Shown here piece after piece: positions 5,201 through 48,023 of a DNA stretch of 64,000 bases (its first letter is position 1; every line of letters starts with the position of its first letter). The position numbers and the translations under genes were made by a program. A model generated the notes under the pieces. That model searched no databases, had not been told where the DNA came from, and saw only the letters and a program-made list of their open reading frames with translations. Location: positions 258,373 through 322,372 of the IMG/VR virus record IMGVR_UViG_3300031951_000001; one strand, given 5' to 3'.

Positions 5201-5254
5201 GGTATTTTGTTAGAAATAAATGTAGGTATAGAATTTACAATAAGTTGTAATTAA
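2249..5254 (+). CDS. Putative baseplate wedge protein
   Basis: 1001 aa; 'LLKNLAQTLG' and 'FLFKSKGTRKSIEVLMRLIG' resemble the KGT motif of baseplate wedge / P2 gpI-like proteins. Confidence 0.6.
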   Translation: MAIKKFTCPPQASGQGSFSDNLVGFQLTTGGGLTQANFEFSTGVVEKVNRTFNTGTFSDPVSLDSLGIGSVNQSKLIFENNFKVYPNFDLSQITNFVQYGSMSKRMSASITTVISKFPAGIEVNKLGMDYTKGATAYNIVYYPIDDQSSMEISVAKMANPFGVDFTVNATRNLQLKEVQVSPLRNMTVEYINYSLYVNGVGYNIKRIIPTDSLSTGVLKIYVEGRPFSGVTDVSDTLIIRPNDQQVSKVFNEDLDEVENFLLNRNLTPIYTAAFKIPLEADDGRFYVATQNISWPLDGRWNLDIRTPNFTNYIEKIGEASENFDGYLTNLVSRFLVTGAFKDFDTQGQKVEKILQIFGRSFDDTKKYITALGFMNSVNYNTGNDIPSQLLKNLAQTLGFNTDISPITNSDFLSSVFGQKNNDKSSFAGVSIQQTPDELNYQYYRNLCLNAAFLFKSKGTRKSIEVLMRLIGAPDALVDFNEYVYVADQKIKLSQFDKKFALISGGTYLEQVAVLDPTDVFSIFGVKYTGFTTNFIIDDVNIGIGAYPIDEQGYPIAPNDTENYFFQIGSGWFESTPKHRSPAQPNLTTSVFTGANPDYQTSLIPYTYGQIYLDRYRNFPYMSMGFKLTQIPDNNKSWTDAETGLRENLDGNFNARYYVDNEKLVLNAKNIDLFMNPGQGLLYDVWYMSRQYNYPIANQGLGWVQPTRCNPDPYTMYPSRDGVDWTVINPQPRQKTFFEFAQTFWQNTINVRNRQYFGAYPTLESIYWRYLESQKNVGIENNNFNYQSMMEYVQDMGDYWIRLVEQMIPATTLWNTGIKYENSIFHRQKYVWRRQAGCQIVAIPCKPCTVTDNIFTDNCPVQTATCSLYPWNPNSSQIQSFAAILGNIVNKYLTNNGLSLNQCVSDSINSIWYVDIRLQGIQLTQYPFFNGVGYNLDGLSYPSNSDWYNGINEALMSLSNYGYSYYLTDTDEVVVINNICSLNSSGILLEINVGIEFTISCN

Positions 5255-8200
5255 TGGCGATATGTAGTTTAACATATAGATTATCAGTGACTGGCGATTG
5301 TACTAACCAAGGTCTTGGGGCGTTCAATCTTCAGGTACAAGGTAGGGCTCCGTTTTTTTACCAATTTTTTTCACCATTTGACGACCCATTACCAATCCCT
5401 TTTGGGGATGGGGTAAGTGAGTTAACTATAAGTAATCTAACACCAAACACGTATTCATTACAAATCACAGATAGTTGTGTCCCACCCACTAGACAAATAG
5501 TTAACGTAATAATATCTGATGGAGTATGTGTTTCTTTATTGGACCATGCAAATACAACTTGTGATGCACCAAACGGGTCGATTACCGCAAGAACTGATAA
5601 TAACTTACAATTAACCCAATATTTTTTATATGAAAACACAAGAGGTTATGTTACTTCAGGAGTTTCTTCTTTAGATGATTTTGTTTTCAGAGATTTGTCA
5701 GGAGGTACTTATTATGTGGTGGTAAATGACGGAGGGGGATGTACAGGTAGGTCTGAAAGTTGTATAATTAAACCCTCAACTCCGTTTGATTACGGTTTTT
5801 ACATAGTAAACGATTCACCATGTACAACTAACACCGGTAAAGTATTCGTAACCGGCCTAACGGGAACCGAACCATACACGTATCAATGGAATACTGGAAG
5901 TATTGAACCTTCGATAACAGGTTTATCAAATGGTAATTATTCTGTCACAGTAGTTGATGCGACAGGATGTAGGAAATCAAAAAATGTTACAGTAGGTATG
6001 GTAAGGGCGATAGGGGTTGCTGAATTGATTACTATCCCACCGTCTTGTTCGGGTAATGATGGTCAAATAACCATAGTAGTTACAGGAGGAACAACTCCAT
6101 ATTATTATCTTGGTAGTAATGGACAAAGTTTAATTACTTTTAGCGAAACATTTAGTTTAACTGGAATACCATCTGGTAACTATTCCATTACAATCACTGA
6201 CGCAGCCTTATGTTCTACTAGTATTTCACAAACACTTGTAACCCCAAATGGATTTACTATAGGAAACATTGGAGTTGTTAACTCAACTTGTAACAATTCT
6301 TCAGGAGCATTGAGCCCCATAACACTAATTGGAGGAAACCCCCCATTTACGTATACTCTTACTTATCCATCGGGTAATTCGATACAGCAAACAGTAAACG
6401 GGAACTCAAATCAGTTTCAAGGACTATCCGCCGGCACATATACACTAACAATTTCAAATGGTCCGTGTACTTTCACAAATACGTATACAATTAATAATAT
6501 TGAAAAATATACCGTAACGACTTCCTCCACAGGAACAACCTGTAATGGTAGTAATGGTAGTATATCTGCAAGAGTATCTTCAGGGTTTACCTTACCTTTA
6601 AGTTATCAATTAACAGGGCAACCTACAATTAGTAATACATCACAGACCGTAGTCACATTTAACAATTTATTTTCAGGTAGTTACCAATTAACAGTAACTG
6701 ACGCTTTACTATGTTCACAAGTACAAAATGTAACGGTAACCGCAGCTGATAGCATTGATTTTTCTATGGCAGGAACCAATCTAAATTTTGGTAACGATGG
6801 AACAATTCAGGTTTATATAACCGAAGGGCCTGCACCTTATAATATACAATGGAGTGATAATGTTAATGGTCAAACAGGTTTGAATTTAACTAATCTTTCA
6901 GCCGGAACATATAGTGTTCTTATTACCGATGCTAATGGGTGCCAATTGAGTCATCAATTGACTTTGGTAGGGTATAATAACAGAGGTGGATATGAAACGT
7001 ATAACTATTGCCAAACAGAGTTTGTATCAAATGGTTTAACAGTTTTAAAGAGACCCCAAAATATGTTTTTAGAAGGGTTTTACGATTTAACTTCGGGTGA
7101 AACGAACTGTATTTTAAATGAGGCTATTTTTACTGCGGTAATTAGTGTTGATGGGACAGTTGTCGAGCAACCATTTTATACAAGTAACAGTTTAGGTGAC
7201 TATCCATCAGACCAATTGTGGTTTAATACGATAGATTCTATTTTAACATCTTTCGATTCAATTGGTAATGTCACCATAGACCCTGCTCAAAATAGTATAA
7301 CTCTTCAAAGTAGTTGTACTGATAGTGGATTAAGTTTGAACAGTGCTGAAGTAAGCGTTGATTTCAAAATTTCGTATGACATTTCCTGTGTATGTAAAGT
7401 TATACCAATACCAGGACCTGTATTTAACACATGTGATATGATATATACCGACGCTTCATCCCAAATATATAATTATGTTTTAAGTTCAGATACGAGCACT
7501 TTATTAAGTGTTGATGGATATAATTTTGATACCCCAAGTATTGCCTATACCAATACAAAATTGTGGGCGTACACTACATCAGCCGGTTCAACCTCAATTA
7601 GAGAATGGGATATTACTCTGAATCCATTTACCGCTTTATATAATAGAACAATAACTTTAGGATTTGCGATTGGTAATGCAATAGGAGTTAAATCAGGTAA
7701 TATATTAATTACAACAAATGCGGATGTAACACCTAATAGATATATTGAAATAAATGTTTCAGGAATATCTCCTGTTGTTACAAATAAAGTTAATTTAGAA
7801 AACTTCGAAGAAGTTGTAGGAAGTATAGTTAATGGAAATGACGGAAACTTCTATGTGTTAATTCAAAATAATCTGAATGAACCATTTGTCGATTATTACT
7901 TAAAAATCGTTAGTACTTTCGATTATTCGACTACATTCACATTGGAATTAACACCTACTATAGTAGGTGTTCCTTCAGGATTATTCTTTAATCCTGATTT
8001 GGTAAATAATTCTATAATTTATTTGGTTGATGATGCTGCTAATATATATCAAGTCACTTTATCCCAACCAAATAGCGTATTATCATATGGTTCTATCGGA
8101 GGAGCGGTAATAACCCCTAGCTTATATCAAGGTAATAGTTGTTTCACACCAGAATTTGTTTTACCAACATTACCATGTGGACAAAATAGTACATTAGGGT

Positions 8201-8742
8201 TTATTAACCTGAATAATACAACAGGTGGTTATTTTGTAACAAGAGTTAATTTGGGGTCTGCAACAGGAATTGCAGAATTAACAATACAGGGAAGTACTAA
8301 TTCTAGACACCAAATAATTTGGAATGGAAACATAGTTGCTGACTCATTATTCTTGACTGGTGTAAATGATAATGCGGGTTTGAATATTAGTATTAATGAA
8401 ATTATACAATACACCCAATTAAATAAATATAATTATACTCCTGGTACCGGTAATGCTACTCAAGTATTCCCTAATTCAGATTGGACCTCAAATGGAACAA
8501 TAAATGTTAGCTATACTGCTAATGATGTTGCTCCATTAACTCCGCAAAGATTGTTTGGTTCGGTTGGAAATCAAATAGGGGTTGTGGAGAATTACCCGAC
8601 TCCGGCTTCTTTAGCAAGTGATACTGATATAAAACTTCAGTTTACAAAAACTTTACCAAACCCAACTTACGTTGAAATTGTTACTATTTGTGCGGCTTTT
8701 GCGGGGGGTAATTACGAATTTAATATGAGATGTATAACCTAA
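5254..8742 (+). CDS. SprB-repeat tail/adhesin-like protein with one beta-propeller-like module
   Basis: 1162 aa; repeated 'G(G/T)T.PYTY.W...I.GL..G.YSVTV.DA.GC' units; ~7430-8160 matches the module repeated in the 3782 aa protein. Confidence 0.7.
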   Translation: MAICSLTYRLSVTGDCTNQGLGAFNLQVQGRAPFFYQFFSPFDDPLPIPFGDGVSELTISNLTPNTYSLQITDSCVPPTRQIVNVIISDGVCVSLLDHANTTCDAPNGSITARTDNNLQLTQYFLYENTRGYVTSGVSSLDDFVFRDLSGGTYYVVVNDGGGCTGRSESCIIKPSTPFDYGFYIVNDSPCTTNTGKVFVTGLTGTEPYTYQWNTGSIEPSITGLSNGNYSVTVVDATGCRKSKNVTVGMVRAIGVAELITIPPSCSGNDGQITIVVTGGTTPYYYLGSNGQSLITFSETFSLTGIPSGNYSITITDAALCSTSISQTLVTPNGFTIGNIGVVNSTCNNSSGALSPITLIGGNPPFTYTLTYPSGNSIQQTVNGNSNQFQGLSAGTYTLTISNGPCTFTNTYTINNIEKYTVTTSSTGTTCNGSNGSISARVSSGFTLPLSYQLTGQPTISNTSQTVVTFNNLFSGSYQLTVTDALLCSQVQNVTVTAADSIDFSMAGTNLNFGNDGTIQVYITEGPAPYNIQWSDNVNGQTGLNLTNLSAGTYSVLITDANGCQLSHQLTLVGYNNRGGYETYNYCQTEFVSNGLTVLKRPQNMFLEGFYDLTSGETNCILNEAIFTAVISVDGTVVEQPFYTSNSLGDYPSDQLWFNTIDSILTSFDSIGNVTIDPAQNSITLQSSCTDSGLSLNSAEVSVDFKISYDISCVCKVIPIPGPVFNTCDMIYTDASSQIYNYVLSSDTSTLLSVDGYNFDTPSIAYTNTKLWAYTTSAGSTSIREWDITLNPFTALYNRTITLGFAIGNAIGVKSGNILITTNADVTPNRYIEINVSGISPVVTNKVNLENFEEVVGSIVNGNDGNFYVLIQNNLNEPFVDYYLKIVSTFDYSTTFTLELTPTIVGVPSGLFFNPDLVNNSIIYLVDDAANIYQVTLSQPNSVLSYGSIGGAVITPSLYQGNSCFTPEFVLPTLPCGQNSTLGFINLNNTTGGYFVTRVNLGSATGIAELTIQGSTNSRHQIIWNGNIVADSLFLTGVNDNAGLNISINEIIQYTQLNKYNYTPGTGNATQVFPNSDWTSNGTINVSYTANDVAPLTPQRLFGSVGNQIGVVENYPTPASLASDTDIKLQFTKTLPNPTYVEIVTICAAFAGGNYEFNMRCIT

Positions 8743-8772: not shown

Positions 8773-11247
8773 ATGGCTGCTAATTTTTATAATTTTGAAT
8801 TTTGTTGTAGTAATTTAGGAACAACCATATCGGCAAATGATATTGGTCAACCAAGTTTTGCGTCAAATCAGGTCTATTTTTTAGAATCATTAATTTTGTC
8901 AGGATGTGTGAGGGCCATAAGTGTTTCCTCATCCCCAGCAGGTGAAATCATATTAGATGATGCGAATTATACTCTAACCAGTTATAATAGTTGTTCATTG
9001 TGTACAGGGTCAACTGGTGGATGTTTCCCACCTGTGCCAACCCCAACTCCTACAATCTATTATAGTTCAGATACTAGATGTGGTAATGGAATACTAAAAA
9101 GAAATGAATGTGACCCTATAGTTATATTCCCAATGGGAGTTCAATGTGTTGGTGCAAATCCAACTTTGACGACAATACCTGATGGGTCTTTGTCACTAAT
9201 AATCACAGGTGGAACACCACCTTATACTGTTACGTGGAGTACTGGAGGTAATGGATTACTTCTAACTAATTTAGGTGTTGGGAGCTATAGCTCAATTGTT
9301 GTGGATTATTATGGTGATTTCACGGCTTATACTACTTGTACTTTAACCGCTCCAACTCCAGTGCCTACAGAAACTAGATTAACCAACACACCAACAGTTA
9401 CACAAACAGTTACGCCGACCCCGGACCCTAGTTATCCTTCATTCTGCTTAACATTGACTAATATTAGGCCACCACAAACAATTAACATGTATTTTACATA
9501 TACTGGGGAATTGTTAAACAGTATGCCTCAGTATTTAAGTAATAATAACTATAATATATATTGGTCCACAGACCAAGTCCCTAATAGTTGGGTATTAGAC
9601 GGCACACTAACCCAAGGTAATGTTATAAACTATACAACAGATATCACACCGTTATCAGGGTGGGTATTTTTGGACCCGCAAAATCAAGGGTCTGTTACAG
9701 GTATTTTAGGTGAATGTGCATCTTACGGAAATTTGTGTTTTACTTATAGACAAATCAAAGGTCCTGGTGACCCATTATATGAAGGTGTAATTGATTTATT
9801 TTATACAGGACAGATTAATGGGTATCCTTCATGGCAATCTTCTGATGGTACGTATATTCTTACTTGGCAAACTACTAATGGAGGTAGATGGGTAATTGAT
9901 TTTACAACAAATCCTAAGTATACTAATCCGACTAATTCAAATCCATCGATACCGCCATTAACAGGATGGCAACAACCTGGTACAACACCACCTAGTTTTG
10001 CAACAATATATGAAGGTAATTGTACTCCAAGTACTACAGTCGGAACAGCATCCCTCAATGGAAGTAATAACAACACAAGCGGTGGGGGAAGTGTAATCGG
10101 AGGAGGACTTGGAGGTAATACTAGCGGTTTAGTTTCTGGAAATAATTTAGGAGGGGCTTTAACAACTAATAATCCATCCACGGGAGATATACCATTTAAT
10201 GATACGGAGGGTAGAGACGGAACTACAACCCTTGGTGGATATCAATGCGAGTGTATTGCGGTTAGAACAATAAGTACTTACCCCGGAATCGCATTTTACA
10301 CAGATTGTGATGGTAATCCCGCACAGATATCTGTACCTGGAGGTATAGGAGTAAATGCGAGAGCTTGTATATGTAGAAGAGTTGGGACAACAGTAACGGG
10401 AGGGGTTATTGAAGAGCCATGTCAAACCGCTCAAAGCGCGGGGGGACAAACTTCAATAACAAATTATTGTTTAGATATTTTGGGAGATTCTTGTAATCAA
10501 AATGTTACAGGTGGAGGAACTCGTAGTGCGGTTACTACCGCAGAAGATACCGGAATAATAAATGACGGTAACATAACTTTTAGGGCTTCAGGAGGATATC
10601 CACCCTACCAGTATTCAATAGACGGAGGATTAACATATAAATCTTCACCACTGTTCAGTAAATTAGGACCTGGCAGTTATAATACAATTATAAAAGATTC
10701 TTCAGGTAATACGTACAGTAATCAGGTTACTTTGTTCGGACCTGTAGGACCTACTATTTACCAAGTATCGCTTGAAACAAGCAACGTAATACCTAGAAGT
10801 GCTTCTAATGTAACTACAAGACAATTTACATCGACTATTAAGGTAACTCCTGATTTACCCGATGGAGTTGTTCTAACTTTTGATTTAATACATACGGATA
10901 CCTTTAGAAGGTCTCCATCATTAACTGCAGCTACTTTAGTTACGAGTAGTTTACTGAAAAAGAATTCATTTAATTACACAGCATCTACGGTGGTATCAGA
11001 TACAGGTACGACTCTAAATACAAATTCAGGTTGCCAACAGAAAGTAATTTATGTAAATAATTTAACAGAAACTTGGACATCTGTAAAATACTCAAAGACG
11101 GACACACTGTCTCTAATTACATCAACTAGTGTAACAAGAAATTCAATAGACAAGTGTTACATAGGAGAATCTATTGATGATTTTACATTAACAAATTTAA
11201 CAATAAGTGGATGTAGTAATTGCGGTGTTTCAAACATTACAGTATAA
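8773..11247 (+). CDS. SprB-repeat, Cys-rich structural/fibre protein with Pro-Thr and Gly-rich linkers
   Basis: 824 aa; 'GGTPPYTVTWS', 'ASGGYPPYQYSIDGG', PTPTP tracts. Confidence 0.6.
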   Translation: MAANFYNFEFCCSNLGTTISANDIGQPSFASNQVYFLESLILSGCVRAISVSSSPAGEIILDDANYTLTSYNSCSLCTGSTGGCFPPVPTPTPTIYYSSDTRCGNGILKRNECDPIVIFPMGVQCVGANPTLTTIPDGSLSLIITGGTPPYTVTWSTGGNGLLLTNLGVGSYSSIVVDYYGDFTAYTTCTLTAPTPVPTETRLTNTPTVTQTVTPTPDPSYPSFCLTLTNIRPPQTINMYFTYTGELLNSMPQYLSNNNYNIYWSTDQVPNSWVLDGTLTQGNVINYTTDITPLSGWVFLDPQNQGSVTGILGECASYGNLCFTYRQIKGPGDPLYEGVIDLFYTGQINGYPSWQSSDGTYILTWQTTNGGRWVIDFTTNPKYTNPTNSNPSIPPLTGWQQPGTTPPSFATIYEGNCTPSTTVGTASLNGSNNNTSGGGSVIGGGLGGNTSGLVSGNNLGGALTTNNPSTGDIPFNDTEGRDGTTTLGGYQCECIAVRTISTYPGIAFYTDCDGNPAQISVPGGIGVNARACICRRVGTTVTGGVIEEPCQTAQSAGGQTSITNYCLDILGDSCNQNVTGGGTRSAVTTAEDTGIINDGNITFRASGGYPPYQYSIDGGLTYKSSPLFSKLGPGSYNTIIKDSSGNTYSNQVTLFGPVGPTIYQVSLETSNVIPRSASNVTTRQFTSTIKVTPDLPDGVVLTFDLIHTDTFRRSPSLTAATLVTSSLLKKNSFNYTASTVVSDTGTTLNTNSGCQQKVIYVNNLTETWTSVKYSKTDTLSLITSTSVTRNSIDKCYIGESIDDFTLTNLTISGCSNCGVSNITV

Positions 11248-33000: not shown

Positions 33001-35416
33001 TTCTGAAAGTTTACCAGTTACTGTGACGGACCAATCCCAATCACCAGAGTGTATCACAGTTGAGTTTATACCTGTTACAAAAACACCGACTCCAACACCT
33101 ACTAAAACTCCAACACCTACCGTGACTATGACGATAACGCCAACTTCAGGTGCAACAGAAACACGGACTCCGACGCCGACTACCACTCAAACTTCAACAC
33201 CAACAATAACATCTACGATTACTCCGACAATAACGGCAACACCAACAAGAACGGCGACTCAAACACCAACAATAACAAGAACGGCGACTCAAACACCAAC
33301 AATAACAAGAACGGCGACTCAAACACCGACAATAACAAGAACGGCGACTCAAACACCGACAAGAACTGCGACACCAACAAGAACACCAACTAGAACGGCA
33401 ACAAATACTCCATCGATTACCCCAACCATAAGTATAACTCCAACAATAACCTCAAATTTACCATGTAAATGTTTTAATTTTTACAATACAAGTGATACGG
33501 TAAATGGTACTCTTATATACACTGCTTGTAATTTAACAGTTAGTTCTACAACGGTATCGGCTAATTCATTTGTACAATTGTGTGTAAATTTAAGCGGATA
33601 TAGTGGGTCATCACAAATAACATTTGTTAACCAAGTTGGTTCATGTGTAAATGGTTTTTGTCCTAACATATCTATAAATTCTTGTGATTTGTTATCGGTT
33701 AAAAAAGAACCTTCTGGTCCGACTAATGGTCTTTGGCAGATTATGAGTATTAGAAACGAAAGTCTTTTGTATTTGCCGGTTTCTGGTAGAACTGTAGGAA
33801 CCAACGCTTTAGCGAGAACGTCTAATAAAGTTTGGGTACTAGGATTTTTTACGGCATTAGGTGGTTCTAGAATAAGGGAATACTCAATTACCCAAAATCC
33901 TTGGTCTGCGGTGGTGACTAATAACTATACATTACCGACAAATTTGCCGTCTGTTATCGACAATGGTATGGCGGCAATCGATGATGAGAATTTTATTGTT
34001 GGGTCCGGAACTGCATTGAATGTTATTGCAAAATTAAATGTTTCAGGTGGAATTTTATCATCTACTAAAATTATAGATTTAATATCACCATTTACGGTTT
34101 TTGGTGACATGATTTATACTACAACCAATAAAGTCATAGTTGCGGTTAAAAATACAATTAATACTAACATATGGCAAATTCACCAATATGATGTTAATGG
34201 GACTTTTGAACTGGCGGTAGACGTTTCATCTATATCTTTATTTAATTCCGGAATAAATTTCGCGGTAGTTAATAACCAATTATATTTATTACCACATAAT
34301 CAAACATATAATAATTATTATTTAATTAATTTAAATAATCCTTACAATACCACAATTCAGTCGGCTCTTGGAGGTAGTGCCCCAAATGACGTTGCTCAAA
34401 ATCCTGAATGTATTAATATTCAGTTTATCCCTTCTACACAGACACCAACACCAACAAGAACAAAAACTCCGACACCAACAAGAACTCCAACAAGAAGTGC
34501 AACACCAACAAGAACTCCAACAAGAAGTGCAACACCAACAAGAACTCCAACAAGAAGTGCAACACCAACAAGAACTCCAACAAGAAGTGCAACACCAACA
34601 AGAACACCAACAATAACCATGAGTCCGTCGATTACACCAAGTCGAACAGTAACAATGACACCTTCATCTATTGGTATCTATACTCAACCATTGATGGTAA
34701 GTTTTTCTGGAACATCTACTGTAATATCAAGATACGATGTAACAACAAATACTATTACAACTTTAGATGTACAAAGTTCCGGTATTTTACCAAATCAAGA
34801 TATTGCATGTACTCAAAATAAATTTTGGTTATCAAATCAGGGGTCTGGTAACATAATAAAAGAATATACTTATACCGCGTCACCTTTCAATTATGTGTTG
34901 AATAGAACTTTGAATATACCAGTTACATTGACTGATGGATTAACTGTAAGGACTGTGGGAGGTATTGAATATTTGATTGGATGTACAGGTAATACAACTA
35001 TTGTTGAAATGGATATATCATCAACAACGGCCATAGTTACCGATAAATTTGATTTACCTCTTAACAGAACCATAGGTGCTGATATGATGTATACTAATAC
35101 TGGAAAATTAATAGTTGCCAACTATTCAGGTGGTAATACAACAGTCGGATTTATGACGCAGTATAACTATGAAACAAATACTTTAGAGATTGATAGGGCA
35201 TTACCAACTACTTATGCTGCTGGCGGTCAAAAAGTTTATTTTGTATCTAATAATAATATCTATAGTACTAGTATCTCTGCTAGTCTTTCGGTTGTTTATC
35301 AATGGAATACAGATAGTAATATTAACAATCCACTTCCATTACAATCCTTCGAGTTACCACTACTTCGTGGAAGCGCTCAACCACAAGAATTCATAAACAT
35401 TAATTTCACCTCATAA
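24068..35416 (+). CDS. Giant modular fibre/adhesin-like protein: Thr-Pro linkers, seven ~230 aa beta-rich modules and small Cys-rich modules
   Basis: 3782 aa uninterrupted ORF; recurring 'DIA.T..KLW...I.E(W/Y).IT..PF.A...R.I' and 'GD...T..GK.I' modules. Confidence 0.8.
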   Translation: MPTALIQSVNYAGQYGDITFNPQTGGTVSVGVQLLPFNYVADYVYGVYVVCFSAFSVCCEFNLLAPTPTPTATITKTPTITPTETVTPTKTPTPTITPTMTMTPTPSTIFCVDCVESGYTYVFSCAPTPSITRTPSVTPTITYTPTQTSTKTPTQTPTTTQTPTITKTSTQTPTITKTSTPTRTLTPTGTNPPSVPECAVIFNSLQNVFFYDVDTDTTTQLIVPDTVGSATNDIAHTSSKLWMASASEIYEWDITLSPFTAVFNRVITLPSGIGPGLGAINNTTLIAVQSGGNPKQVVSVNITTNTAVFTTLFPMLINRGVAGDIILTTTNKVIITTNATAAPFGQFITQYNFLNGDPEVDIQLNPTITQPWGIFQDNGEIYIMDGNETNNVFHIDKNYPYTITLTGDTGYSVYGASQLPNCLDVNFIPQITPTPTQTPTQTPTTTQTPTVTVTETITNTPTNTPTPTKTPVSCDCFEITAVGNNAVIDYFKCGSEGVSVRKLIEPARPFKVCLENSGVTTLSGVTQISNFGPCIDGECASPTPTPTVTQTPTNTLTPTITPTNTLTPTITPTETQTPTITSTSTQTPTSTQTITPTLTQSPTPTVTLTNTVTPTITETPTSTATQTPTTTTTQTPTSTETPTTTQTPTSTQTPTTTQTPTTTQTPTNTMTVTPTPVCIDGCSVLYVDSESLIYSYDYNTETSTVIFDPKATVRDIANTSSRLFITIVNRIQRYSFSTCPVSVTLIDEITRLFLGDGLFAINDTTLIITSTQAIGQENVQELNYITNTVTPKFSLPTGYSVRGDFILTTGGKFIVSMFQGLSNYILQYDYSTGEQEVLFQVSQIIAGFFEFGGNIYAVDTSGIVYQAILDSPWGLVSTTLDPLTFTGVIKGTSQELSCLPTNFNIVTPTPTPTQTPTPTVTVTETPTMTVTETPTQTETPTQTPTNTETPTQTSTPTPTPTLDCFCYTFVNTSLLDKQNVSGKDCNNINFEYSLQISGSEGDTVSLCASSSLVLDPFIAVFNNGVCEGFCGTSTPTPTPTETPTPTITDTPTQTPTITETNTQTPTQTPTNTVTETSTSTPTPTQTETPTNTVTSTPTNTVTSTPTITSTSTQTPTVTSTPTPSITEYKPAIRTFSGCCFPFEIFKLYEIPGLTANTITEGTVYYIESGVFSGCATNIAETFTQNNYLFVNISAQTSCSGCSASYPCPSSTPTPTVTSTPTVTPTITSTPTITSTPTQTETPTQTETPTQTQTSTVTSTPTESPTSTQTQTQTQTQTVTPTKTSTPTRTPIECVCYSITNIGEFFGSYNGILCNGGPSGGIPIGPGVTFTACYAKGSLQTVGGTLTFLENGSCENSILCPTRTPTPTRTGTPTPTPTTTETPTNTVTPTTTTTETPTSTSTQTPSVTNTITSTPTQTLCCTSWTLYGGLGQLLDNGFVIKPPLRVGDDFALIPTNVGSPGTLVGQVLELISVSPPLSPQYFTILTATFNPINSAYLLTFTPTLTINLGSTFQSIIYNIYQSGGTQFNVYNCGGSLTTLNLNNNEILVIPCSYDVQVISGFGYAESDPSCVCVTQTPTPTLTPTVTSTITQTPTNTVTVTQYTCNCYFINVPDIRDGVNLVFLDCLGSLISIAPNNFGNYCVREIIDYGSGTAELVGLCIDGNCPTPTPTPTQTETPTPTETPTQTITQTPTVTQTSTPTVTQTSTPTVTITESATQTQTPTPTETPTNTLTPTVTITESVTPTRTLTPTKTQAPCLSSCDVLLLDNVGRVYIYNSVTNSPLYLGIDGPDGSFDIAHTNNKIWLNRGTSLYEYDIILCPFSATFSREISGSTAFSAGLFAINDTTLIANNGATPSSILEIDVSTNPYTVTTKFSLLPGRRVSGDYVLTNSGKLIVSNFSGTNPNAPTGVYITQYNYITSATPPVDNNVDILISPTIVFPYGLYQYGGGFYILSANGTQYTLDLNPPYTLTAAPTVPLPPNTINAAYFGASQSNGCFDNNIVPVSPTPTSTPTPTPTPTATITQTPTITQTSTPTPTITSTVTQTPTQTQTPTSTITVTPTQTSTVTSTPTVTSTPTPTITEYKPAIRTFSGCCFPFETFKIFEIPGLTANSITEGTVYYIESVGFSGCATNIAETFTQNNYLFVNLSAQTSCSGCSTNYPCPSSTPTPTVTSTPTLTPTQTQTPTQTQTPTETSTQTPTETSTQTPTQTQTSTQTPTNTQTSTNTPTTTVTPTLTRTPDTCNCYTFFNISTSQSLTVDFIDCTGLQNQITINYGNSAQVCVKNNIFSGTPSGALVSFLNGDCTNGCPTTTIQACNPFVVNGTNRIIYTYDPITNTQIPLPINTESVSIYDIATNDNYLWIYGNFATLGNGIKEYFITTSPFTSSLNRFISGSTLYQSTRNGLAVLNNTTLITASGTAGNVIVSLNISSNTWVATPLFTLPTNRVLRGDLTYTNTGNIIALTYNNVAGTGSFLTQFDLFGNQELEFQIGNSVEGFGLFMYNSQIFTVASSSASPAVVRRDLNFPYTSLTVNNMTITNVGFAQPLSCLNVNFIGVTRTPTQTPTPTPTPTTTKTNTPTSTQTQTQTPTRTSTPTNTQTPTITSTSTITPTVTRTATITPTVTRTSTITPTVTRTSTITPTITQTATQTNTPTVTQTATVTQTATQTPTPTETSNLFACTCYNFFNTSNNQPGTVTYYNCDGVFSSVTVSATSYVQLCVSGNSTNPLYTATTQITAIDELGDCTVSCPTINLDSCISFLAGGPGNIIQSYDFQTNTTTFLPIPNRPWSMLGIANTSNKLWVHGTYLGFTSGGIREWDITFSPFSATYNGRTINIQSNTILPNSNACGLVAIDNFNLLSVSGATAGSQSVVNVDISDTITNNAVFTKLFDLPSNRRILTDLVFTQTGKIIIMTQTTTPVKIFITQYDILGNIEVDVPLFTSGIDANSGWSILINSNNLYIVRATTPGEIYQVNLTSPYSATLLSESLPVTVTDQSQSPECITVEFIPVTKTPTPTPTKTPTPTVTMTITPTSGATETRTPTPTTTQTSTPTITSTITPTITATPTRTATQTPTITRTATQTPTITRTATQTPTITRTATQTPTRTATPTRTPTRTATNTPSITPTISITPTITSNLPCKCFNFYNTSDTVNGTLIYTACNLTVSSTTVSANSFVQLCVNLSGYSGSSQITFVNQVGSCVNGFCPNISINSCDLLSVKKEPSGPTNGLWQIMSIRNESLLYLPVSGRTVGTNALARTSNKVWVLGFFTALGGSRIREYSITQNPWSAVVTNNYTLPTNLPSVIDNGMAAIDDENFIVGSGTALNVIAKLNVSGGILSSTKIIDLISPFTVFGDMIYTTTNKVIVAVKNTINTNIWQIHQYDVNGTFELAVDVSSISLFNSGINFAVVNNQLYLLPHNQTYNNYYLINLNNPYNTTIQSALGGSAPNDVAQNPECINIQFIPSTQTPTPTRTKTPTPTRTPTRSATPTRTPTRSATPTRTPTRSATPTRTPTRSATPTRTPTITMSPSITPSRTVTMTPSSIGIYTQPLMVSFSGTSTVISRYDVTTNTITTLDVQSSGILPNQDIACTQNKFWLSNQGSGNIIKEYTYTASPFNYVLNRTLNIPVTLTDGLTVRTVGGIEYLIGCTGNTTIVEMDISSTTAIVTDKFDLPLNRTIGADMMYTNTGKLIVANYSGGNTTVGFMTQYNYETNTLEIDRALPTTYAAGGQKVYFVSNNNIYSTSISASLSVVYQWNTDSNINNPLPLQSFELPLLRGSAQPQEFININFTS
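33245..33366 (+). repeat. Near-perfect 30 bp tandem repeat (~4 copies) encoding TRTATQTPTI
   Basis: Unit acaagaacggcgactcaaacacc(a/g)acaata. Confidence 0.85.
34472..34605 (+). repeat. Perfect 30 bp tandem repeat (4 copies plus a partial) encoding TPTRTPTRSA
   Basis: Unit acaccaacaagaactccaacaagaagtgca. Confidence 0.9.
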
Positions 35417-38252: not shown

Positions 38253-39032
38253 ATGATTAAAAAACTAATTCACTTCAGTGACCTACACGTTAGGTTATTC
38301 AAAGACCACGACCTGTATCGTAAGATAATGGTTGATGCGTTTGAGCAATGGGAACAAATCGCTCCTGACCGAATTGTTTTCACTGGTGACCTTGTACATT
38401 CTAAAAATCAAATGACACCAGAGCTCGTTGAGTTTGTTGCTTGGGTGCTGACAGAGTGTTCAAAGATTGCTAAAACAATATTGATACCCGGCAACCACGA
38501 TTTCCTTGAAAACAATATGGAAAGATTGGATGCTTTGACACCTGTGGTTGATTCACTTCGTAATGATAATATTATTTATTACAAGAACAGAGGTGTTTAT
38601 AAAGATGAAAATATTGATTGGTGTGTTTACTCACTTATGGACCACAACATACCACCAGACATTGAAAAATCGGATAGGGTAAAGATTGGTTTGTTTCATG
38701 GACCGGTACAAGGACTTACTACCAATTTGGGATTTAAGTTTGAGGACGGGTTTGAGGCATCTAAATTTGAGGGTTGTGACCTTGTTTTGTGTGGAGACAT
38801 ACATAAGCGTCAGATATTCGATATACCTGGTAATAAGAAGGCGTACATGATTGGCTCAACCATTTGTCAGAACTATGGTGAAACAATTACTAAACACGGG
38901 TATGGTATTTATGACGTTGAAAAAGATGAATATCTCACCGTAGATTTGGTTAATCCAAGACCATTTTTATCATTTAGAATTAACTCATTTGAAGAATTAG
39001 AACATGGAACAGAAAAGCTCGTTAATTATTGA
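38253..39032 (+). CDS. sbcD: Mre11/SbcD-like metallophosphoesterase nuclease
   Basis: 'HFSDLH', 'TGDLVH', 'PGNHD', 'FHG', 'GDIH' motifs; ATG at 38253. Confidence 0.85.
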   Translation: MIKKLIHFSDLHVRLFKDHDLYRKIMVDAFEQWEQIAPDRIVFTGDLVHSKNQMTPELVEFVAWVLTECSKIAKTILIPGNHDFLENNMERLDALTPVVDSLRNDNIIYYKNRGVYKDENIDWCVYSLMDHNIPPDIEKSDRVKIGLFHGPVQGLTTNLGFKFEDGFEASKFEGCDLVLCGDIHKRQIFDIPGNKKAYMIGSTICQNYGETITKHGYGIYDVEKDEYLTVDLVNPRPFLSFRINSFEELEHGTEKLVNY

Positions 39033-39456
39033 GTTAAGTAATCAAGACCATAATGATTTGATGTCATTCTGTAAATTGAATGACATTGAAATGGTCGATG
39101 ATTTTGCTAAACTTTGTTTTCGTAAAGGTTATTATATAGAGAAGTACGGGTTATTGAATCAAGGACAACTACCTGATATTATCGAGAGAGAACTTGAGAA
39201 GAAGGTTATTGTTGAGGATAGTTCTAAAATTGAAGAACTACAGAATGAGATTTACGTGCTCAAGGGAAAACTTGAAAATCAAAAAGAAGTTGAATGTGGG
39301 AAACTTCAACAATCACTCATGGAATTGAATCGACAAATTGGTGACAAAAACAAAGAAATAGAAAATTTAAACAAAAAGATAGACGAGCTTGAGAATCTCA
39401 CAAAAACTTCTTATGCTTTTTATCTAAAAAATTCAAATATAAAAGAAAGATTATGA
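39004..39456 (+). CDS. Hypothetical coiled-coil protein
   Basis: 150 aa; heptad-rich C-terminal half. Confidence 0.6.
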   Translation: MEQKSSLIIELSNQDHNDLMSFCKLNDIEMVDDFAKLCFRKGYYIEKYGLLNQGQLPDIIERELEKKVIVEDSSKIEELQNEIYVLKGKLENQKEVECGKLQQSLMELNRQIGDKNKEIENLNKKIDELENLTKTSYAFYLKNSNIKERL

Positions 39457-40012: not shown

Positions 40013-42385
40013 ATGGATTTGTTTAATCCCCCACCAAATTTCAACTATAAAAAAATGATTCATAAGTTAGATACTAATTCGCTTGATAATCCATACATAC
40101 AGGTCGTATGGGAGGATTATGCTGAAAATATCACGCAAGAAAAGATAAAAAGCGTAAGACATTATTTTCAAAAGAAGTATCTATCAACAAATGTTAATGT
40201 CATAACCAAGACAAAGACATCTGATGAGACCGTTCAGACAGTTGATATTTCATTCAATGTATTGGATAAGAATTATCAACTTGAATTAATGAAGTCTTTT
40301 TTAACTAATAAGGGTAATGATAACCTTTATGATGAAATTTATAAGTTGGATGGTATTGTTGATAGTAAGTTGGCGATGGATGACTCTGAAGTAACACCAT
40401 TCAAACGGTGGTATATCAAAAAAATAGAGTTCTCTAACTTTCTATCATATGGGGAAAATCAAGTTGTTGATTTCACAAAGTGTGATGGTATCACGGTGAT
40501 TGAGTCTAACCCACCAAACTTTGGAGGTAAGACCGTATTGTCGGTTGACTTGTTATTGTTCCTATTCTTCAATGAGACTACCAAGACATCAAAGGCTGAA
40601 GAGGTATTCAATCGTTTCACGGATAAGAACAAGGTATCTGTCAAAGGTGAAATCATTATTGATGGTGATGAATACATTATTGTTCGTAACATTGAACGTA
40701 AGAAGTCTAAAGCTGGTGATTGGAATGTTAAGACCGAGCTAGACTTCTTTAAGAAACTATCTGATGGTAGTCTTATGAATTTCACTGGTGAGCAAAGACG
40801 TGAGACTGAAACGTTTATCAAGAATTCTATTGGGTCAAAGGAAGATTTTCTTATGACTATCCTTACAACGGCAACTAATCTTGAGGATTTGATTGACTCT
40901 AAACCAACAGCTCGTGGTCAAGTGTTATCACGATTTATGGGTCTTGAGTTTCTAAAACGTAAGGAAGACGCTGCGAAGGAAGTGTTCAGTGAGTTTTCAA
41001 AATCAATGATTTCAAATGTTCATAATAGTGAGCAATTGAAAACTGAAATTGAGAATTGTAAAAACGGTATTCAAGAACATAAGAATACCATTGGTGAGAG
41101 ACAGAGTGAATTAATTGATGTTCAGAACAGAATTATCAAAGGTCAAGAATATCGTGATGGGTTGTTAAAGAACAAACACACCGATATTGATAAAGAGATT
41201 AGTATGGTACAACCGGCTCAAGTTAAGTCCGAGATTGCCGACCTAAACTTCAAGAAAGATGTTGTGGTTAAACAATTATCTGAAGTCAAAGTTGTTGAAC
41301 CATCCAAGTATTATCACGAAGACAAACACGATAAAGTTAAAGATGAATACAACAAATCATTTAAACAAATGGTTGAGGTTGAAAGTAAGATTAAATCAAT
41401 TGAAGAATTAAAGAGTTCTGTTGAAGGTGGAATAAAATGTGAACACTGTGGAATTGACTTAATGATGGCCTCAATTACACAATCTAAAATTGCCGAACTT
41501 GATGGTTATATCCAGCAAAAAGACCAAATTTATACCACAATGCAGGTTTTAACCAGCACAGAACAAACATTTGTTAGACTTAAAAAAGAATTTGATGAAT
41601 ACGAAAAGAATAAACTAGTCAAAGAAAAACTCGACTTGAGCATTGAAAGTTTTGATATGAAAATTGAGAAACTCCATGACAAATTGAAAAAGTACGAAGA
41701 GGCCCAAGACAAAATTCAAGAAAATACCAAAATTGAAGAACAACTCCTCAAAGCCAATATGAGACTTGACGATTTGGAAAATCAAAAAACGTCAGTTAAT
41801 AATGAGTTAACTCGTCTCAACTTTGACATTGAAAAACTTAATGATAAGATTGATAATAACAATAAGATTATTGAGAAGATAAAGCAAGAAGCGGAGAGAG
41901 AAAAAATCTATAAAGTTTATTTGGAGATTTATGGTAAGAACGGAATTTCAAAGATTATCATGAAAACCATGATGCCACTTATCAACTCTGAACTTCAAAG
42001 ACTTTTAGAAAACAGTTGTCATTTCAGATTGGAAATTCAAATTAATGAAAAGAATGAGGTTGAATTCATCATGGTTGATAACAATACCCAAGTTGAAAAA
42101 CTTATGTCATCAGGGTCAGGGTATGAACGTACAATAGCATCGCTGGCGTTAAGAGCGGTATTAAGTAAGATATGTTCATTACCAAAACCAAATATCATAG
42201 TTTTTGATGAAGTTTTTGGTAAAATATCTAATGATAATCTTGAAATGGTTTCAGAATTTTTCACAAAAATCAAAGATTATTTTGAAAAAATTTTCTTAAT
42301 AACTCACAATCCATTAGTTACCAACTGGTCGGATAATGTTATCAGGATTAGAAAGGAAGAAAATATTAGCTACGTGTCACAATAA
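40013..42385 (+). CDS. sbcC: Rad50/SbcC (T4 gp46-like) SMC ATPase
   Basis: 'IEFSNFLSYG', Walker A 'NFGGKT', coiled coil with CEHC zinc hook, 'SGSGYE' signature, Walker B 'VFDEVFG', 'LITH'. Confidence 0.9.
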   Translation: MDLFNPPPNFNYKKMIHKLDTNSLDNPYIQVVWEDYAENITQEKIKSVRHYFQKKYLSTNVNVITKTKTSDETVQTVDISFNVLDKNYQLELMKSFLTNKGNDNLYDEIYKLDGIVDSKLAMDDSEVTPFKRWYIKKIEFSNFLSYGENQVVDFTKCDGITVIESNPPNFGGKTVLSVDLLLFLFFNETTKTSKAEEVFNRFTDKNKVSVKGEIIIDGDEYIIVRNIERKKSKAGDWNVKTELDFFKKLSDGSLMNFTGEQRRETETFIKNSIGSKEDFLMTILTTATNLEDLIDSKPTARGQVLSRFMGLEFLKRKEDAAKEVFSEFSKSMISNVHNSEQLKTEIENCKNGIQEHKNTIGERQSELIDVQNRIIKGQEYRDGLLKNKHTDIDKEISMVQPAQVKSEIADLNFKKDVVVKQLSEVKVVEPSKYYHEDKHDKVKDEYNKSFKQMVEVESKIKSIEELKSSVEGGIKCEHCGIDLMMASITQSKIAELDGYIQQKDQIYTTMQVLTSTEQTFVRLKKEFDEYEKNKLVKEKLDLSIESFDMKIEKLHDKLKKYEEAQDKIQENTKIEEQLLKANMRLDDLENQKTSVNNELTRLNFDIEKLNDKIDNNNKIIEKIKQEAEREKIYKVYLEIYGKNGISKIIMKTMMPLINSELQRLLENSCHFRLEIQINEKNEVEFIMVDNNTQVEKLMSSGSGYERTIASLALRAVLSKICSLPKPNIIVFDEVFGKISNDNLEMVSEFFTKIKDYFEKIFLITHNPLVTNWSDNVIRIRKEENISYVSQ

Positions 42386-44937: not shown

Positions 44938-45540
44938 ATGTTCGAATTAATAAAATACGGAGAGTTTGAAGTAGGGGACCACAACAACAAAATTCAGATA
45001 ATATTACTTAATACTTTAAGAGACAAAGAAACGTTTTTGAACTCCGCGAAGTATAGATTTAACGGGAAAAATCAAAAAATACCTAACTACTTAATCACTA
45101 GGGAAGGTAAGATTATTCAACTATTAGAAAACACTGAAAGTCCTAAATTCTTTTTGGATAAAAAAATAAATCAGAATTCTATTATAGTCTGTTTAGAAAA
45201 TTTAGGTTGGTTACAAAAAGAACCTTTAAACGAGAATTACATTAACTGGATTGGAGATATTTATAAAGGTAATGTGTTCGAAAAAAAGTGGAGGGATTAT
45301 TTCTTTTGGGAACCTTATAGTGAAATACAAATCGAAGCGACAGCTTTTATATGTAAAAAATTGTTCGAAGAAATATCCATAAAGAAGCAAGTGGTAGGAC
45401 ACAATACCAAAATTAATGGAGCCGAGAGAACAGAGGGAGTTTTATGTAGAAGTAATTTCAGTCAAGATTTTACTGACGTAAATCCTTCTTTCGATTTTGA
45501 ACTTTTTTTAAAATATATAGAAGATGAACAATTCACATGA
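44938..45540 (+). CDS. Amidase_2 (N-acetylmuramoyl-L-alanine amidase)-fold protein, probably catalytically degenerate
   Basis: 'NYLITREGKIIQL', 'NQNSIIVCLE', 'YSEIQIEA', 'VVGH', 'DVNPSFDF'; no His in the first Zn-ligand strand. Confidence 0.65.
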   Translation: MFELIKYGEFEVGDHNNKIQIILLNTLRDKETFLNSAKYRFNGKNQKIPNYLITREGKIIQLLENTESPKFFLDKKINQNSIIVCLENLGWLQKEPLNENYINWIGDIYKGNVFEKKWRDYFFWEPYSEIQIEATAFICKKLFEEISIKKQVVGHNTKINGAERTEGVLCRSNFSQDFTDVNPSFDFELFLKYIEDEQFT

Positions 45541-46817: not shown

Positions 46818-47063
46818 ATGGCACTTTCAGACACCGATAAAAAACAAATTGAAGTCATGATACGTAAAGAAATCAAAGACTTCATTGGTAGTAATACCAT
46901 GAGACAATATGAAGACAAACTTATTGACACTATTTCTCGAGAAATCAAAAGAGGAAAGATTGAGGGAGATGTTAAAGAGGTAGTCATAAAAGTATTCAGA
47001 GAGTTTTACAATTTTATGTGGACTCAAAGAGGATATTGGGAACCAAGATTGAAAAATGCTTAA
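46818..47063 (+). CDS. Hypothetical protein
   Basis: ATG 46818, 'MALSDTDKKQIE...'. Confidence 0.6.
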   Translation: MALSDTDKKQIEVMIRKEIKDFIGSNTMRQYEDKLIDTISREIKRGKIEGDVKEVVIKVFREFYNFMWTQRGYWEPRLKNA

Positions 47064-47301
47064 AGAAGAAGAAAGTTTTACCAATAGGCTTAAAAGTGAA
47101 ATTAATACCCAAGCCGGTAGAAGTGGTGTCGTACATAAGTATGGTAGTGACGCGGTAATGTCAATTAATAAACTTACACAATCTTTAGGTGAGGATGAAA
47201 TGGAAGAGGACTGGTCTGAAAAGTATAAAAAAAGTATTGACTGTAATAACCCAAAGGATTTAGTCAAAGAGCTCATTGTCAAGGGAGGAAAAAGAAAATG
47301 A
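47056..47301 (+). CDS. Hypothetical protein; 5' part of a probable frameshifted gene joined to 47298-48023
   Basis: Ends '...WSEKYKKSIDCNNPK'; the -1 frame continues GFSQRAHCQGRKKK into ATG 47298. Confidence 0.65.
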   Translation: MLKEEESFTNRLKSEINTQAGRSGVVHKYGSDAVMSINKLTQSLGEDEMEEDWSEKYKKSIDCNNPKDLVKELIVKGGKRK

Positions 47302-48023
47302 AAGAAAATATAACCGAAGCCGAAAGAACATTAATGGCAAGATTGAAAGACTTGGCAAGAAAACACGTCAAGGGTGACTCAAAAGATGCTAACCGAAAGG
47401 AAAAAATACAAAAAATGTTTGACATGTTAGTAAAACAACTTCACAAAGGTACAAAGGTGGAGATGGAACACGACATGGGTAAAGAGGAGGCTCAAAAAAT
47501 AGCTTTAGACCATTTGGAGGAATTTCCTGATTATTATACACGTTTAAAAAAGGCGGAGGCGGCTGAAGCCACAGGCTCGGGCTCGGCTGGTGGGTTTGAG
47601 GTCCCCTTATTTTCTGAACCAAAAAAACTTGATAGTATGTTCAAATCAGAACAACCTAAAAAGAAAGTTAAAGGAGGTTTTGTTAATGACGAAACCCCCA
47701 AGAAGGTCGAGGCTACCGAAGCTACCAGCTCTTCTTCTGTTGGTGCCTATGACGCACCAGGTTTTGAAGATGTTAAAATGAAAGGTAATAATGAACGTGG
47801 TTCAGGTAGGTCATATAAGAATACACAAATACCTGGTGGAAAATTTGTTAAAGTTAAGGAAAAATGTAAAAAATTTCCTTATTGTAATCAGGGAGATATT
47901 AAAGCTTTGAAAATTTGGGAGAATAAGACACTCCAAAAAGTCATAACAGACATAAGTAAAAAACAGAATATTAGTGAGAGTGTAATCAAAAATATTATTG
48001 CTTACGAACTAGGATTAATTTAA
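47298..48023 (+). CDS. DUF5661-like domain protein (3' part of the frameshifted gene)
   Basis: 'KGTKVEMEH...AQKIALDHLEEFPDYYTRL'; repeated 'EAT.S.S.G.(F/Y)..P'. Confidence 0.65.
   Translation: MKENITEAERTLMARLKDLARKHVKGDSKDANRKEKIQKMFDMLVKQLHKGTKVEMEHDMGKEEAQKIALDHLEEFPDYYTRLKKAEAAEATGSGSAGGFEVPLFSEPKKLDSMFKSEQPKKKVKGGFVNDETPKKVEATEATSSSSVGAYDAPGFEDVKMKGNNERGSGRSYKNTQIPGGKFVKVKEKCKKFPYCNQGDIKALKIWENKTLQKVITDISKKQNISESVIKNIIAYELGLI

What the first reader, a model, noticed from the sequence alone, without database searches (positions are those of the whole stretch)
47250..47300. Slippery heptamer C_CCA_AAG at a -1 frame break joining ORFs 47056 and 47298
Seen: frame 0 reads AAT AAC CCA AAG GAT (N N P K D) and stops at 47301. 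The heptamer 47250-47256 is C CCA AAG, a correctly phased X_XXY_YYZ site. A -1 shift gives GGA TTT AGT CAA AGA GCT CAT TGT CAA GGG AGG AAA AAG AAA ATG, in frame with ATG 47298. This yields WSEKYKKSIDCNNPKGFSQRAHCQGRKKK, which I recall as a contiguous small motif in large-phage proteins (from memory, not searched). Established: A_AAG is a strong bacterial -1 shift site. Inference: either programmed frameshifting giving short and fused products, or a one-base deletion or sequencing error.
Basis: partly seen in the sequence, partly recalled or inferred. Interest (0 to 1): 0.65.

Follow-up and report, generated by a model that had tools for sequence, protein, structure and literature searches.

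The report
One-base deletion, not programmed frameshift
The apparent frameshift site is one missing A that splits a conserved 322-codon phage gene in this record only; every other assembly of the same phage and every relative reads straight through, so it is an assembly error or private mutation, not programmed recoding.

Summary
ORF 47056..47301 and ORF 47298..48023 overlap by ATGA. C_CCA_AAG (47250-47256) is in phase. A -1 shift there restores WSEKYKKSIDCNNPKGFSQRAHCQGRKKK, which is a real, near-invariant block of a phage protein family carrying DUF5661.

The break is private to this record. Four other assemblies of the same phage are 100% identical over 6.7-20 kb around the site, except that each has CCCAAAAGG (A4) where the window has CCCAAAGG (A3). 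That gives one 322-aa ORF (296 aa in a shorter variant). Two contigs of another phage carry the same 37-mer with A4. Logan contigs of four runs from four studies all carry the extra A. All 18 homologous loci examined have the motif contiguous in a single ORF, with synonymous variation at the P-K-G-F codons.

There is no RNA structure downstream of the heptamer. The heptamer itself is simply what remains when one A is lost from C_CCA_AAA_G. ATG 47298 is an internal Met codon, and the GGGAGG before it encodes Gly-Arg in a phage that shows no Shine-Dalgarno use.

Verdict: a single-base deletion in an A4 run. It is either a consensus or assembly error or a private allele; programmed frameshifting is not supported. 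Low interest.

The parts
47056..48023 (+). One gene, broken here by a missing base. In other assemblies of the same phage it is a single 322-aa ORF (L004:2758-3726), a hypothetical phage protein with DUF5661.
   Evidence: the intact 322-aa sequence is held letter for letter in the ESM Atlas.
47250..47256 (+). C_CCA_AAG heptamer and site of the deletion. The A run 47253-47255 is A3 here and A4 (CCC AAAA GG) everywhere else.
47212..47297 (+). Near-invariant family block W-S-x-K-Y-K-x-S-I-D-C-x-N-P-K-G-F-S-Q-[RK]-A-H-C-x-G plus a Lys-rich tail. It is read in frame 0 up to 47256 and in the -1 frame from 47256.
   Evidence: Invariant columns are W53-G77 of the intact protein, and the break falls between K67 and G68.
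47257..47301 (+). Out-of-frame tail DLVKELIVKGGKRK* of the 81-aa frame-0 ORF. It is a product of the deletion, not conserved sequence.
   Evidence: No homologue has it.
47298..48023 (+). The '241-aa ORF' is residues 82-322 of the intact protein (Met82 onward). DUF5661 lies at about 47430-47558. ATG 47298 is an internal Met codon.
   Evidence: (DUF5661, E 8e-11, 42.5 bits against a cut-off of 27).
47283..47288 (+). GGGAGG, Shine-Dalgarno-like, 9 nt before ATG 47298. It encodes Gly-Arg of the conserved block and is unlikely to be a ribosome-binding site.
   Evidence: none of 29 other gene starts in the window has an SD-like purine run upstream. The sequence is identical in the intact alleles.
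47108..47185 (+). 78-nt (26-codon) in-frame segment of the poorly conserved N-terminal part. It is absent from one other assembly of the phage (G002/L005, 296-aa variant).
47856..47899 (+). Second near-invariant module of the same gene (GGKFVKVKEKCKKFPYCNQGD). It is shared at k-mer level with other phages in the same samples.
   Evidence: depth spike and contig ends at 47860-47890; invariant columns P260-G280.

Best explanation
Window 47056-48023 is one gene for a 322-aa phage protein of unknown function. Its parts are a variable N-terminus, an invariant Cys-x11-Cys block, DUF5661, a disordered linker and a second invariant block. In this record one A of a four-A run (CCC AAAA GG) is missing. 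That puts the reading frame out by one in the middle of the invariant block, gives a 14-codon out-of-frame tail ending at TGA 47299-47301, and makes the rest of the gene look like a separate ORF starting at an internal Met codon. The slippery heptamer is not an independent signal: deleting any one A from C_CCA_AAA_G necessarily leaves C_CCA_AAG. The deletion is private to this record. It is either a consensus or assembly error or a real allele of the population sampled. I lean slightly to error (about 55:45), because the site sits exactly at a de Bruijn-graph junction shared with other phages. It is not an evolutionarily maintained recoding signal. Shown: the deletion, its uniqueness, the intact ORF elsewhere, and the lack of a stimulator. 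Inferred: error versus real allele.
For: (1) The alignment with S-SRM01 and P-TIM68 shows a single 1-nt gap in the window at the A run. (2) IMG/VR contigs 3300031787_000052, 3300008116_000430 and 3300008114_000012 are identical to the window over about 20 kb, with 0 mismatches, except for one extra A at 47252-47255. JGI contig Ga0315902_10000007 (322,892 bp) is the same over 10 kb. (3) Pattern scans of IMG/VR and the JGI metagenomes that allowed either A3 or A4 found 6 contigs, all A4. (4) In Logan contigs of 4 runs from 4 studies, every bridging contig has an A put in behind 47252. (5) Over about 200 kb aligned with G003 there are only two 1-nt indels: this one and an intergenic A5/A4. (6) All 18 homologous loci have the motif contiguous in one ORF of 282-606 aa, with synonymous changes (CCA/CCT, GGA/GGT, AGT/TCN), so selection acts on P-K-G-F in one frame. 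(7) The 84 nt downstream of the heptamer fold no better than shuffles (MFE -5 kcal/mol, z +1.1). (8) No other gene start in the window has an SD.
Against: The raw reads of the sample from which this record was assembled could not be inspected. Only contigs were available, and contigs drop rare variants, so a real A3 allele in that population is not excluded. C_CC.A_AA.G is one of the three most shift-prone heptamers in E. coli (PMC4066793), so some -1 slippage would occur if the allele is real.
Confidence: 0.93

Rival explanations
1. Programmed -1 ribosomal frameshifting at C_CCA_AAG, maintained by selection, yields a short 81-aa product and a fused 322-aa product in a set ratio.
For: The heptamer is canonical and in phase. 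C_CC.A_AA.G reaches 54% with a strong pseudoknot in E. coli. The -1 frame is open for 255 codons and restores the conserved motif.
Against: The break is absent from four near-identical assemblies, from contigs of four runs and from all 18 homologues. There is no downstream structure. Without a stimulator the best V_VV.A_AA.G motifs shift at about 0.3% in E. coli. The frame-0 tail is not conserved anywhere. The heptamer arises automatically from the deletion.
Confidence: 0.02
2. The A3 allele is real in the source population, and the gene is a recent pseudogene or split gene. A trace of full-length protein may come from unprogrammed -1 slippage at C_CCA_AAG (translational correction of an indel), and the C-terminal 241 aa may come from re-initiation at the ATGA overlap.
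For: G000 differs from G003 by about 30 genuine-looking SNPs and one intergenic 1-nt indel, so it is a distinct population in which private alleles are expected. Illumina-type assemblies rarely miscount A3 versus A4 (own knowledge). Frameshifting that compensates indels is documented in the review PMC5009743 (abstract).
Against: No contig in any collection or run examined carries A3. The gene is conserved from cyanophages to this phage, and the break destroys its most conserved block. The expected rescue without a stimulator is about 0.3%. This phage shows no SD use, so the GGGAGG is unlikely to drive initiation.
Confidence: 0.4
3. Two genuine, separately translated genes coupled by an ATGA overlap; the -1 continuity is a coincidence.
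For: ATGA overlaps are common between phage genes, and an SD-like GGGAGG lies 9 nt upstream of ATG 47298.
Against: The -1 reading reproduces 25 invariant residues of a conserved block exactly. The same DNA with one more A is a single ORF in every other assembly.
Confidence: 0.01

Closest known systems
Bacterial and IS-element -1 programmed frameshift sites (dnaX A_AAA_AAG; IS3/IS911 A_AAA_AAG; C_CC.A_AA.G reporters of Sharma et al. 2014, PMC4066793)
   Same: An in-phase X_XXA_AAG heptamer, which allows tRNA-Pro and tRNA-Lys to re-pair in the -1 frame, and a long open -1 frame.
   Different: There is no downstream stem-loop or pseudoknot and no upstream SD at the stimulatory distance. The break is not conserved in any relative. 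The frame-0 product has no conserved C-terminus.
Phage tail-assembly-chaperone G/GT-type frameshifts
   Same: A phage gene in which a -1 shift would fuse a short product to a longer one.
   Different: Those breaks are conserved across phages, and both frames are under selection. Here the homologues are single uninterrupted ORFs, and the gene belongs to the DUF5661 family, not to the chaperones.
Homopolymer-length indels in metagenome-assembled contigs, or private frameshift alleles
   Same: A single-base length change in a mononucleotide run, unique to one record and otherwise 100% identical to sister assemblies. It lies at a graph junction where contigs of other assemblies end.
   Different: Nothing tested distinguishes it from this class. 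Error versus real allele is unresolved.
Pfam DUF5661 (PF18905) phage hypothetical proteins, e.g. Synechococcus phage S-SRM01 QPX48171
   Same: DUF5661 scores above the gathering cut-off. The same invariant WSxKYKxSIDCxNPKGFSQ block lies directly upstream of DUF5661. The nearest Atlas clusters are 98-100% DUF5661 and viral.
   Different: Module order and content vary between members. The function of the family is unknown: there were no PHROG hits, no PDB fold match and no paper.

Membership tests
Programmed -1 ribosomal frameshift site | In-phase slippery heptamer X_XXY_YYZ at the frame junction | tested here: met
   C_CCA_AAG at 47250-47256, with codons starting at 47251 and 47254. Such heptamers occur 160 times in 19,172 codons of the window, and this one is the automatic residue of deleting an A from C_CCA_AAA_G.
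Programmed -1 ribosomal frameshift site | Stimulatory element (downstream stem-loop or pseudoknot 5-9 nt away, or an upstream SD-like sequence) | tested here: not met
   47257-47340 folds at -5 kcal/mol, z +1.1, and 177 of 200 shuffles fold at least as well. The only SD-like sequence lies 27 nt downstream of the heptamer, not upstream.
Programmed -1 ribosomal frameshift site | Frame break and slippery site conserved in related genomes | tested here: not met
   Four near-identical assemblies, contigs of 4 runs and 18 homologous loci all have one continuous ORF.
Programmed -1 ribosomal frameshift site | Both the frame-0 and the transframe products are made at a defined ratio | not testable with these tools
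   This needs a reporter assay or mass spectrometry.
Pfam DUF5661 (PF18905) protein | Profile match above Pfam's gathering score | tested here: met
   42.5 bits against a cut-off of 27, E 8e-11, at residues 45-87 of the 241-aa ORF, which are residues 126-168 of the intact protein.
Assembly or sequencing homopolymer error | Reads of the source sample disagree with the contig's run length | not testable with these tools
   Only Logan contigs (no raw reads) were served. All of them have A4, but the source run of this record is not identified.

The most novel reading that the evidence does not exclude
The A3 allele is real and dominant in the sampled population of this freshwater jumbo phage. The phage gets by because unprogrammed -1 slippage on C_CCA_AAG, one of the most shift-prone bacterial heptamers, restores a small amount of the full-length DUF5661 protein. 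That would be a natural case of translational correction of an indel, caught just after it arose.
Probability: 0.08. Interest if true: 0.3.

Novelty: not a real feature. Interest (0 to 1): 0.07.

Why it matters
Mainly for annotation. The two ORFs 47056..47301 and 47298..48023 should be treated as one gene with a frameshift. This site should not be counted among candidate recoding signals. It also shows that a perfect, in-phase slippery heptamer at a frame break is the expected by-product of a one-base loss in a C3A4 run, so the heptamer adds no evidence for programming. If the allele proved real, it would be a small natural example of an indel sitting on a highly shift-prone motif.

Tried and rejected
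- **Downstream RNA structure**: none found.
- **PHROGs**, for the two ORFs, the intact protein and the cyanophage motif segments: nothing significant.
- **Pfam** for the motif block itself: no family covers it; only DUF5661 is detected downstream.
- **AlphaFold2** on an 11-sequence alignment: mean pLDDT 60. Only the DUF5661 helices (about residues 90-170) and the C-terminal helices (286-321) are confident, the motif block scores 56-70, and the linker 174-285 is disordered.
- **Foldseek against PDB**: no match at E <= 0.001, so no function was assigned.
- **Paper search for DUF5661**: no papers.
- **SD-driven independent start at ATG 47298**: rejected, because no other gene start in the window has an SD.
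- **Transcriptional slippage**: rejected on established knowledge. A run of 3-4 A is far shorter than the 7 or more needed.
- **tRNA genes in the window**: none, so nothing can be said about tRNA-Lys supply.
- **Direct repeats** at the edges of the 78-nt deletion variant: none found.
- **The large protein searches** (search for homologous proteins, the search of protein representatives) were not used. Locus and pattern searches had already answered the question.

Full report
**Setting.** The window is the last 64 kb of a 322,372-bp virus record from IMG/VR. It is AT-rich. No gene start in the window has a Shine-Dalgarno sequence. Two large ORFs carry SprB repeats. Together these point to a freshwater jumbo phage, probably of a Bacteroidota host; that host assignment is an inference. 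Runs that hold the sequence are lake and freshwater metagenomes.

**Observation.**
- ORF 47056..47301 (81 aa) ends at TGA 47299-47301, which overlaps ATG 47298 of a 241-aa ORF (an ATGA overlap).
- 47250-47256 is C_CCA_AAG in the correct phase.
- The -1 frame is closed by TAA TAA at 47244-47249. It is open from 47250, where it reads PKGFSQRAHCQGRKKK, and runs into ATG 47298.
Synechococcus phage S-SRM01 QPX48171 starts MGWSEKYKKSIDCNNPKGFSQRAHCQGRNKK and continues into a DUF5661 domain. Prochlorococcus phage P-TIM68 AIR93449 has the same block internally.

So the two window ORFs are the halves of one ancestral gene.

**What the break is.** A DNA alignment with the two cyanophages shows exactly one gap in the window, in the A run: CC-AAAA-GG in them, CCC-AAA-GG here.

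The decisive evidence comes from other assemblies of the same phage.
- The search for related loci returned three IMG/VR contigs from other metagenomes with a 100% identical downstream protein.
- Over about 20 kb around the site these contigs have zero mismatches to the window and a single gap: an extra A at 47252-47255.
- With that A the locus is one 322-aa ORF (L004:2758-3726). It is 296 aa in a variant that lacks 26 codons of the N-terminal part.
- A pattern that accepted either A3 or A4 found six contigs in IMG/VR and the JGI metagenomes, all A4. One is a 322,892-bp contig identical to the window over 10 kb but for that base. Two are contigs of a different phage.
- Logan contigs of four runs from four studies all have 'A put in behind 47252' in every contig that bridges the site. 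In run X5 the remaining depth at that place belongs to short pieces of other phages' copies of the motif, which end at the site (tables 7 and 8). That reading of the extra depth is my inference.
- The intact 322-aa protein is held letter for letter in the ESM Atlas.

**Is the record generally error-prone?** No. Over about 200 kb aligned with the 200-kb sister contig there are about 30 substitutions, a few larger in-frame or repeat-associated indels, and only two 1-nt indels. One is this site and the other is an intergenic A5/A4. The record is therefore a slightly different population, and a private real allele cannot be excluded. However, the site lies exactly where contigs of other assemblies end (47253-47275), because co-occurring phages share the following k-mers. 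That is a place where consensus errors are plausible. I lean to error at about 55:45, but only raw reads of the source sample can decide.

**Conservation in distant relatives.** Eighteen homologous loci were examined: fourteen IMG/VR loci (three of them sister assemblies of this phage), two metagenome contigs and two cultured cyanophages. All carry the block contiguous in one ORF of 282-606 aa.
- The codons for N-P-K-G-F-S vary synonymously (AAT/AAC, CCA/CCT, GGA/GGT, TTT/TTC, AGT/TCN). Selection therefore acts on the uninterrupted protein frame.
- In an 11-sequence alignment the invariant columns run from W53 to G77 of the intact protein, and the break falls between K67 and G68.
- The frame-0 tail DLVKELIVKGGKRK has no counterpart anywhere.

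**Frameshift signal.** The heptamer is not independent evidence. The intact allele reads C_CCA_AAA_G, and removing any one A leaves C_CCA_AAG.
- In-phase X_XXY_YYZ sites are common in the window: 160 in 19,172 codons, 3 of them CCCAAAG.
- The 84 nt downstream fold no better than shuffled sequence.
- In E. coli, C_CC.A_AA.G is one of the three best motifs, reaching 54% with the IS3 pseudoknot. Without a stimulator the best V_VV.A_AA.G motifs shift at about 0.3% (Sharma et al. 2014, PMC4066793).
- The GGGAGG at 47283-47288 encodes Gly-Arg of the conserved block, lies downstream of the heptamer, and is present in the intact alleles too. Because the phage uses no SD elsewhere, ATG 47298 is best read as an internal Met codon.

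**The gene.** The protein has five parts: a variable helical N-terminus; the invariant block with two Cys 11 residues apart; DUF5661 (PF18905, 42 bits against a cut-off of 27); a disordered Ser/Thr/Lys-rich linker containing further conserved short modules; and a C-terminal block, GGKFVxVKxKCKxFPYCNQGD, followed by two helices. Its function is unknown: there was no PHROG hit, no fold match and no literature. In cyanophages the homologues lie among head and tail genes. Here the neighbours include an Amidase_2 protein (44938..45540).

**Verdict.** This is a one-base deletion private to this record, either an error or a private allele, in a single conserved gene. Programmed -1 frameshifting is not supported, because two of its three testable defining features (a stimulator and conservation of the break) were tested and not met. 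Interest is low. The residual novel reading is a real allele partly rescued by adventitious slippage, of the kind reviewed in PMC5009743. I give it about 8%.

Noticed in passing
window 47056-48023; loci L007-L016, L037, L046, L080/L081 (alignment A2): The gene family is a mosaic of short near-invariant modules: the WSxKYKxSIDCxNPKGFSQ block, DUF5661, EATGSGxAGGFxxPLFSEPKxxDSMFKxEQPKKKVKGGFV, and IPGGKFVxVKxKCKxFPYCNQGD. They are joined by EAT-SSSS linkers and appear in different orders and combinations. L007 has no DUF5661 and a permuted order. L012, L037 and L046 have an N-terminus that looks ParB-like by eye (not scanned). The motif is 80-95% identical at DNA level between phages that share nothing else alignable, and only about 100 nt of 4 kb hits cyanophages. 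This suggests module shuffling by recombination.
   Followed up: partly
window 47253-47275 and 47860-47890: Logan contigs of all four runs end or branch at the two conserved modules, with depth spikes up to 312 at 47856-47899. Several co-occurring phages therefore share these k-mers.
   Followed up: partly
window 47108-47185: This 78-nt in-frame segment of the same gene is absent from contig IMGVR_UViG_3300008116_000430, giving a 296-aa variant. One contig of run X5 skips 144 nt, 47068-47211. The N-terminal part of the gene is length-polymorphic.
   Followed up: partly
window 41427-41585: A 159-nt in-frame segment inside ORF 40013..42385 (SbcC/Rad50-like Walker B) is absent from the 200-kb sister contig G003.
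   Followed up: no
window-wide gene starts; ORFs 5254..8742 and 8773..11247: There is no Shine-Dalgarno motif before any of 29 gene starts, and two large ORFs carry SprB repeats. This hints at a Bacteroidota host.
   Followed up: no
window 39426 (end of ORF 39004..39456): An in-phase A_AAA_AAT heptamer is followed by a 123-codon open -1 frame. That frame contains an ATG and a hydrophobic protein, so it is most simply the next gene overlapping the end of this one.
   Followed up: no
G000 genome 237931 (upstream of the window); G000 versus G003 overall: The only other 1-nt indel in about 200 kb is an intergenic A5/A4 run 13 nt before a start codon. The two contigs are circularly permuted relative to each other: G003 position 140857 corresponds to the start of G000.
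   Followed up: partly
window 24068-35416, especially 34511-34546: A 3782-aa ORF. A cluster of substitutions against G003 at 34511-34546 lies where two alignment blocks overlap, which suggests an internal repeat.
   Followed up: no
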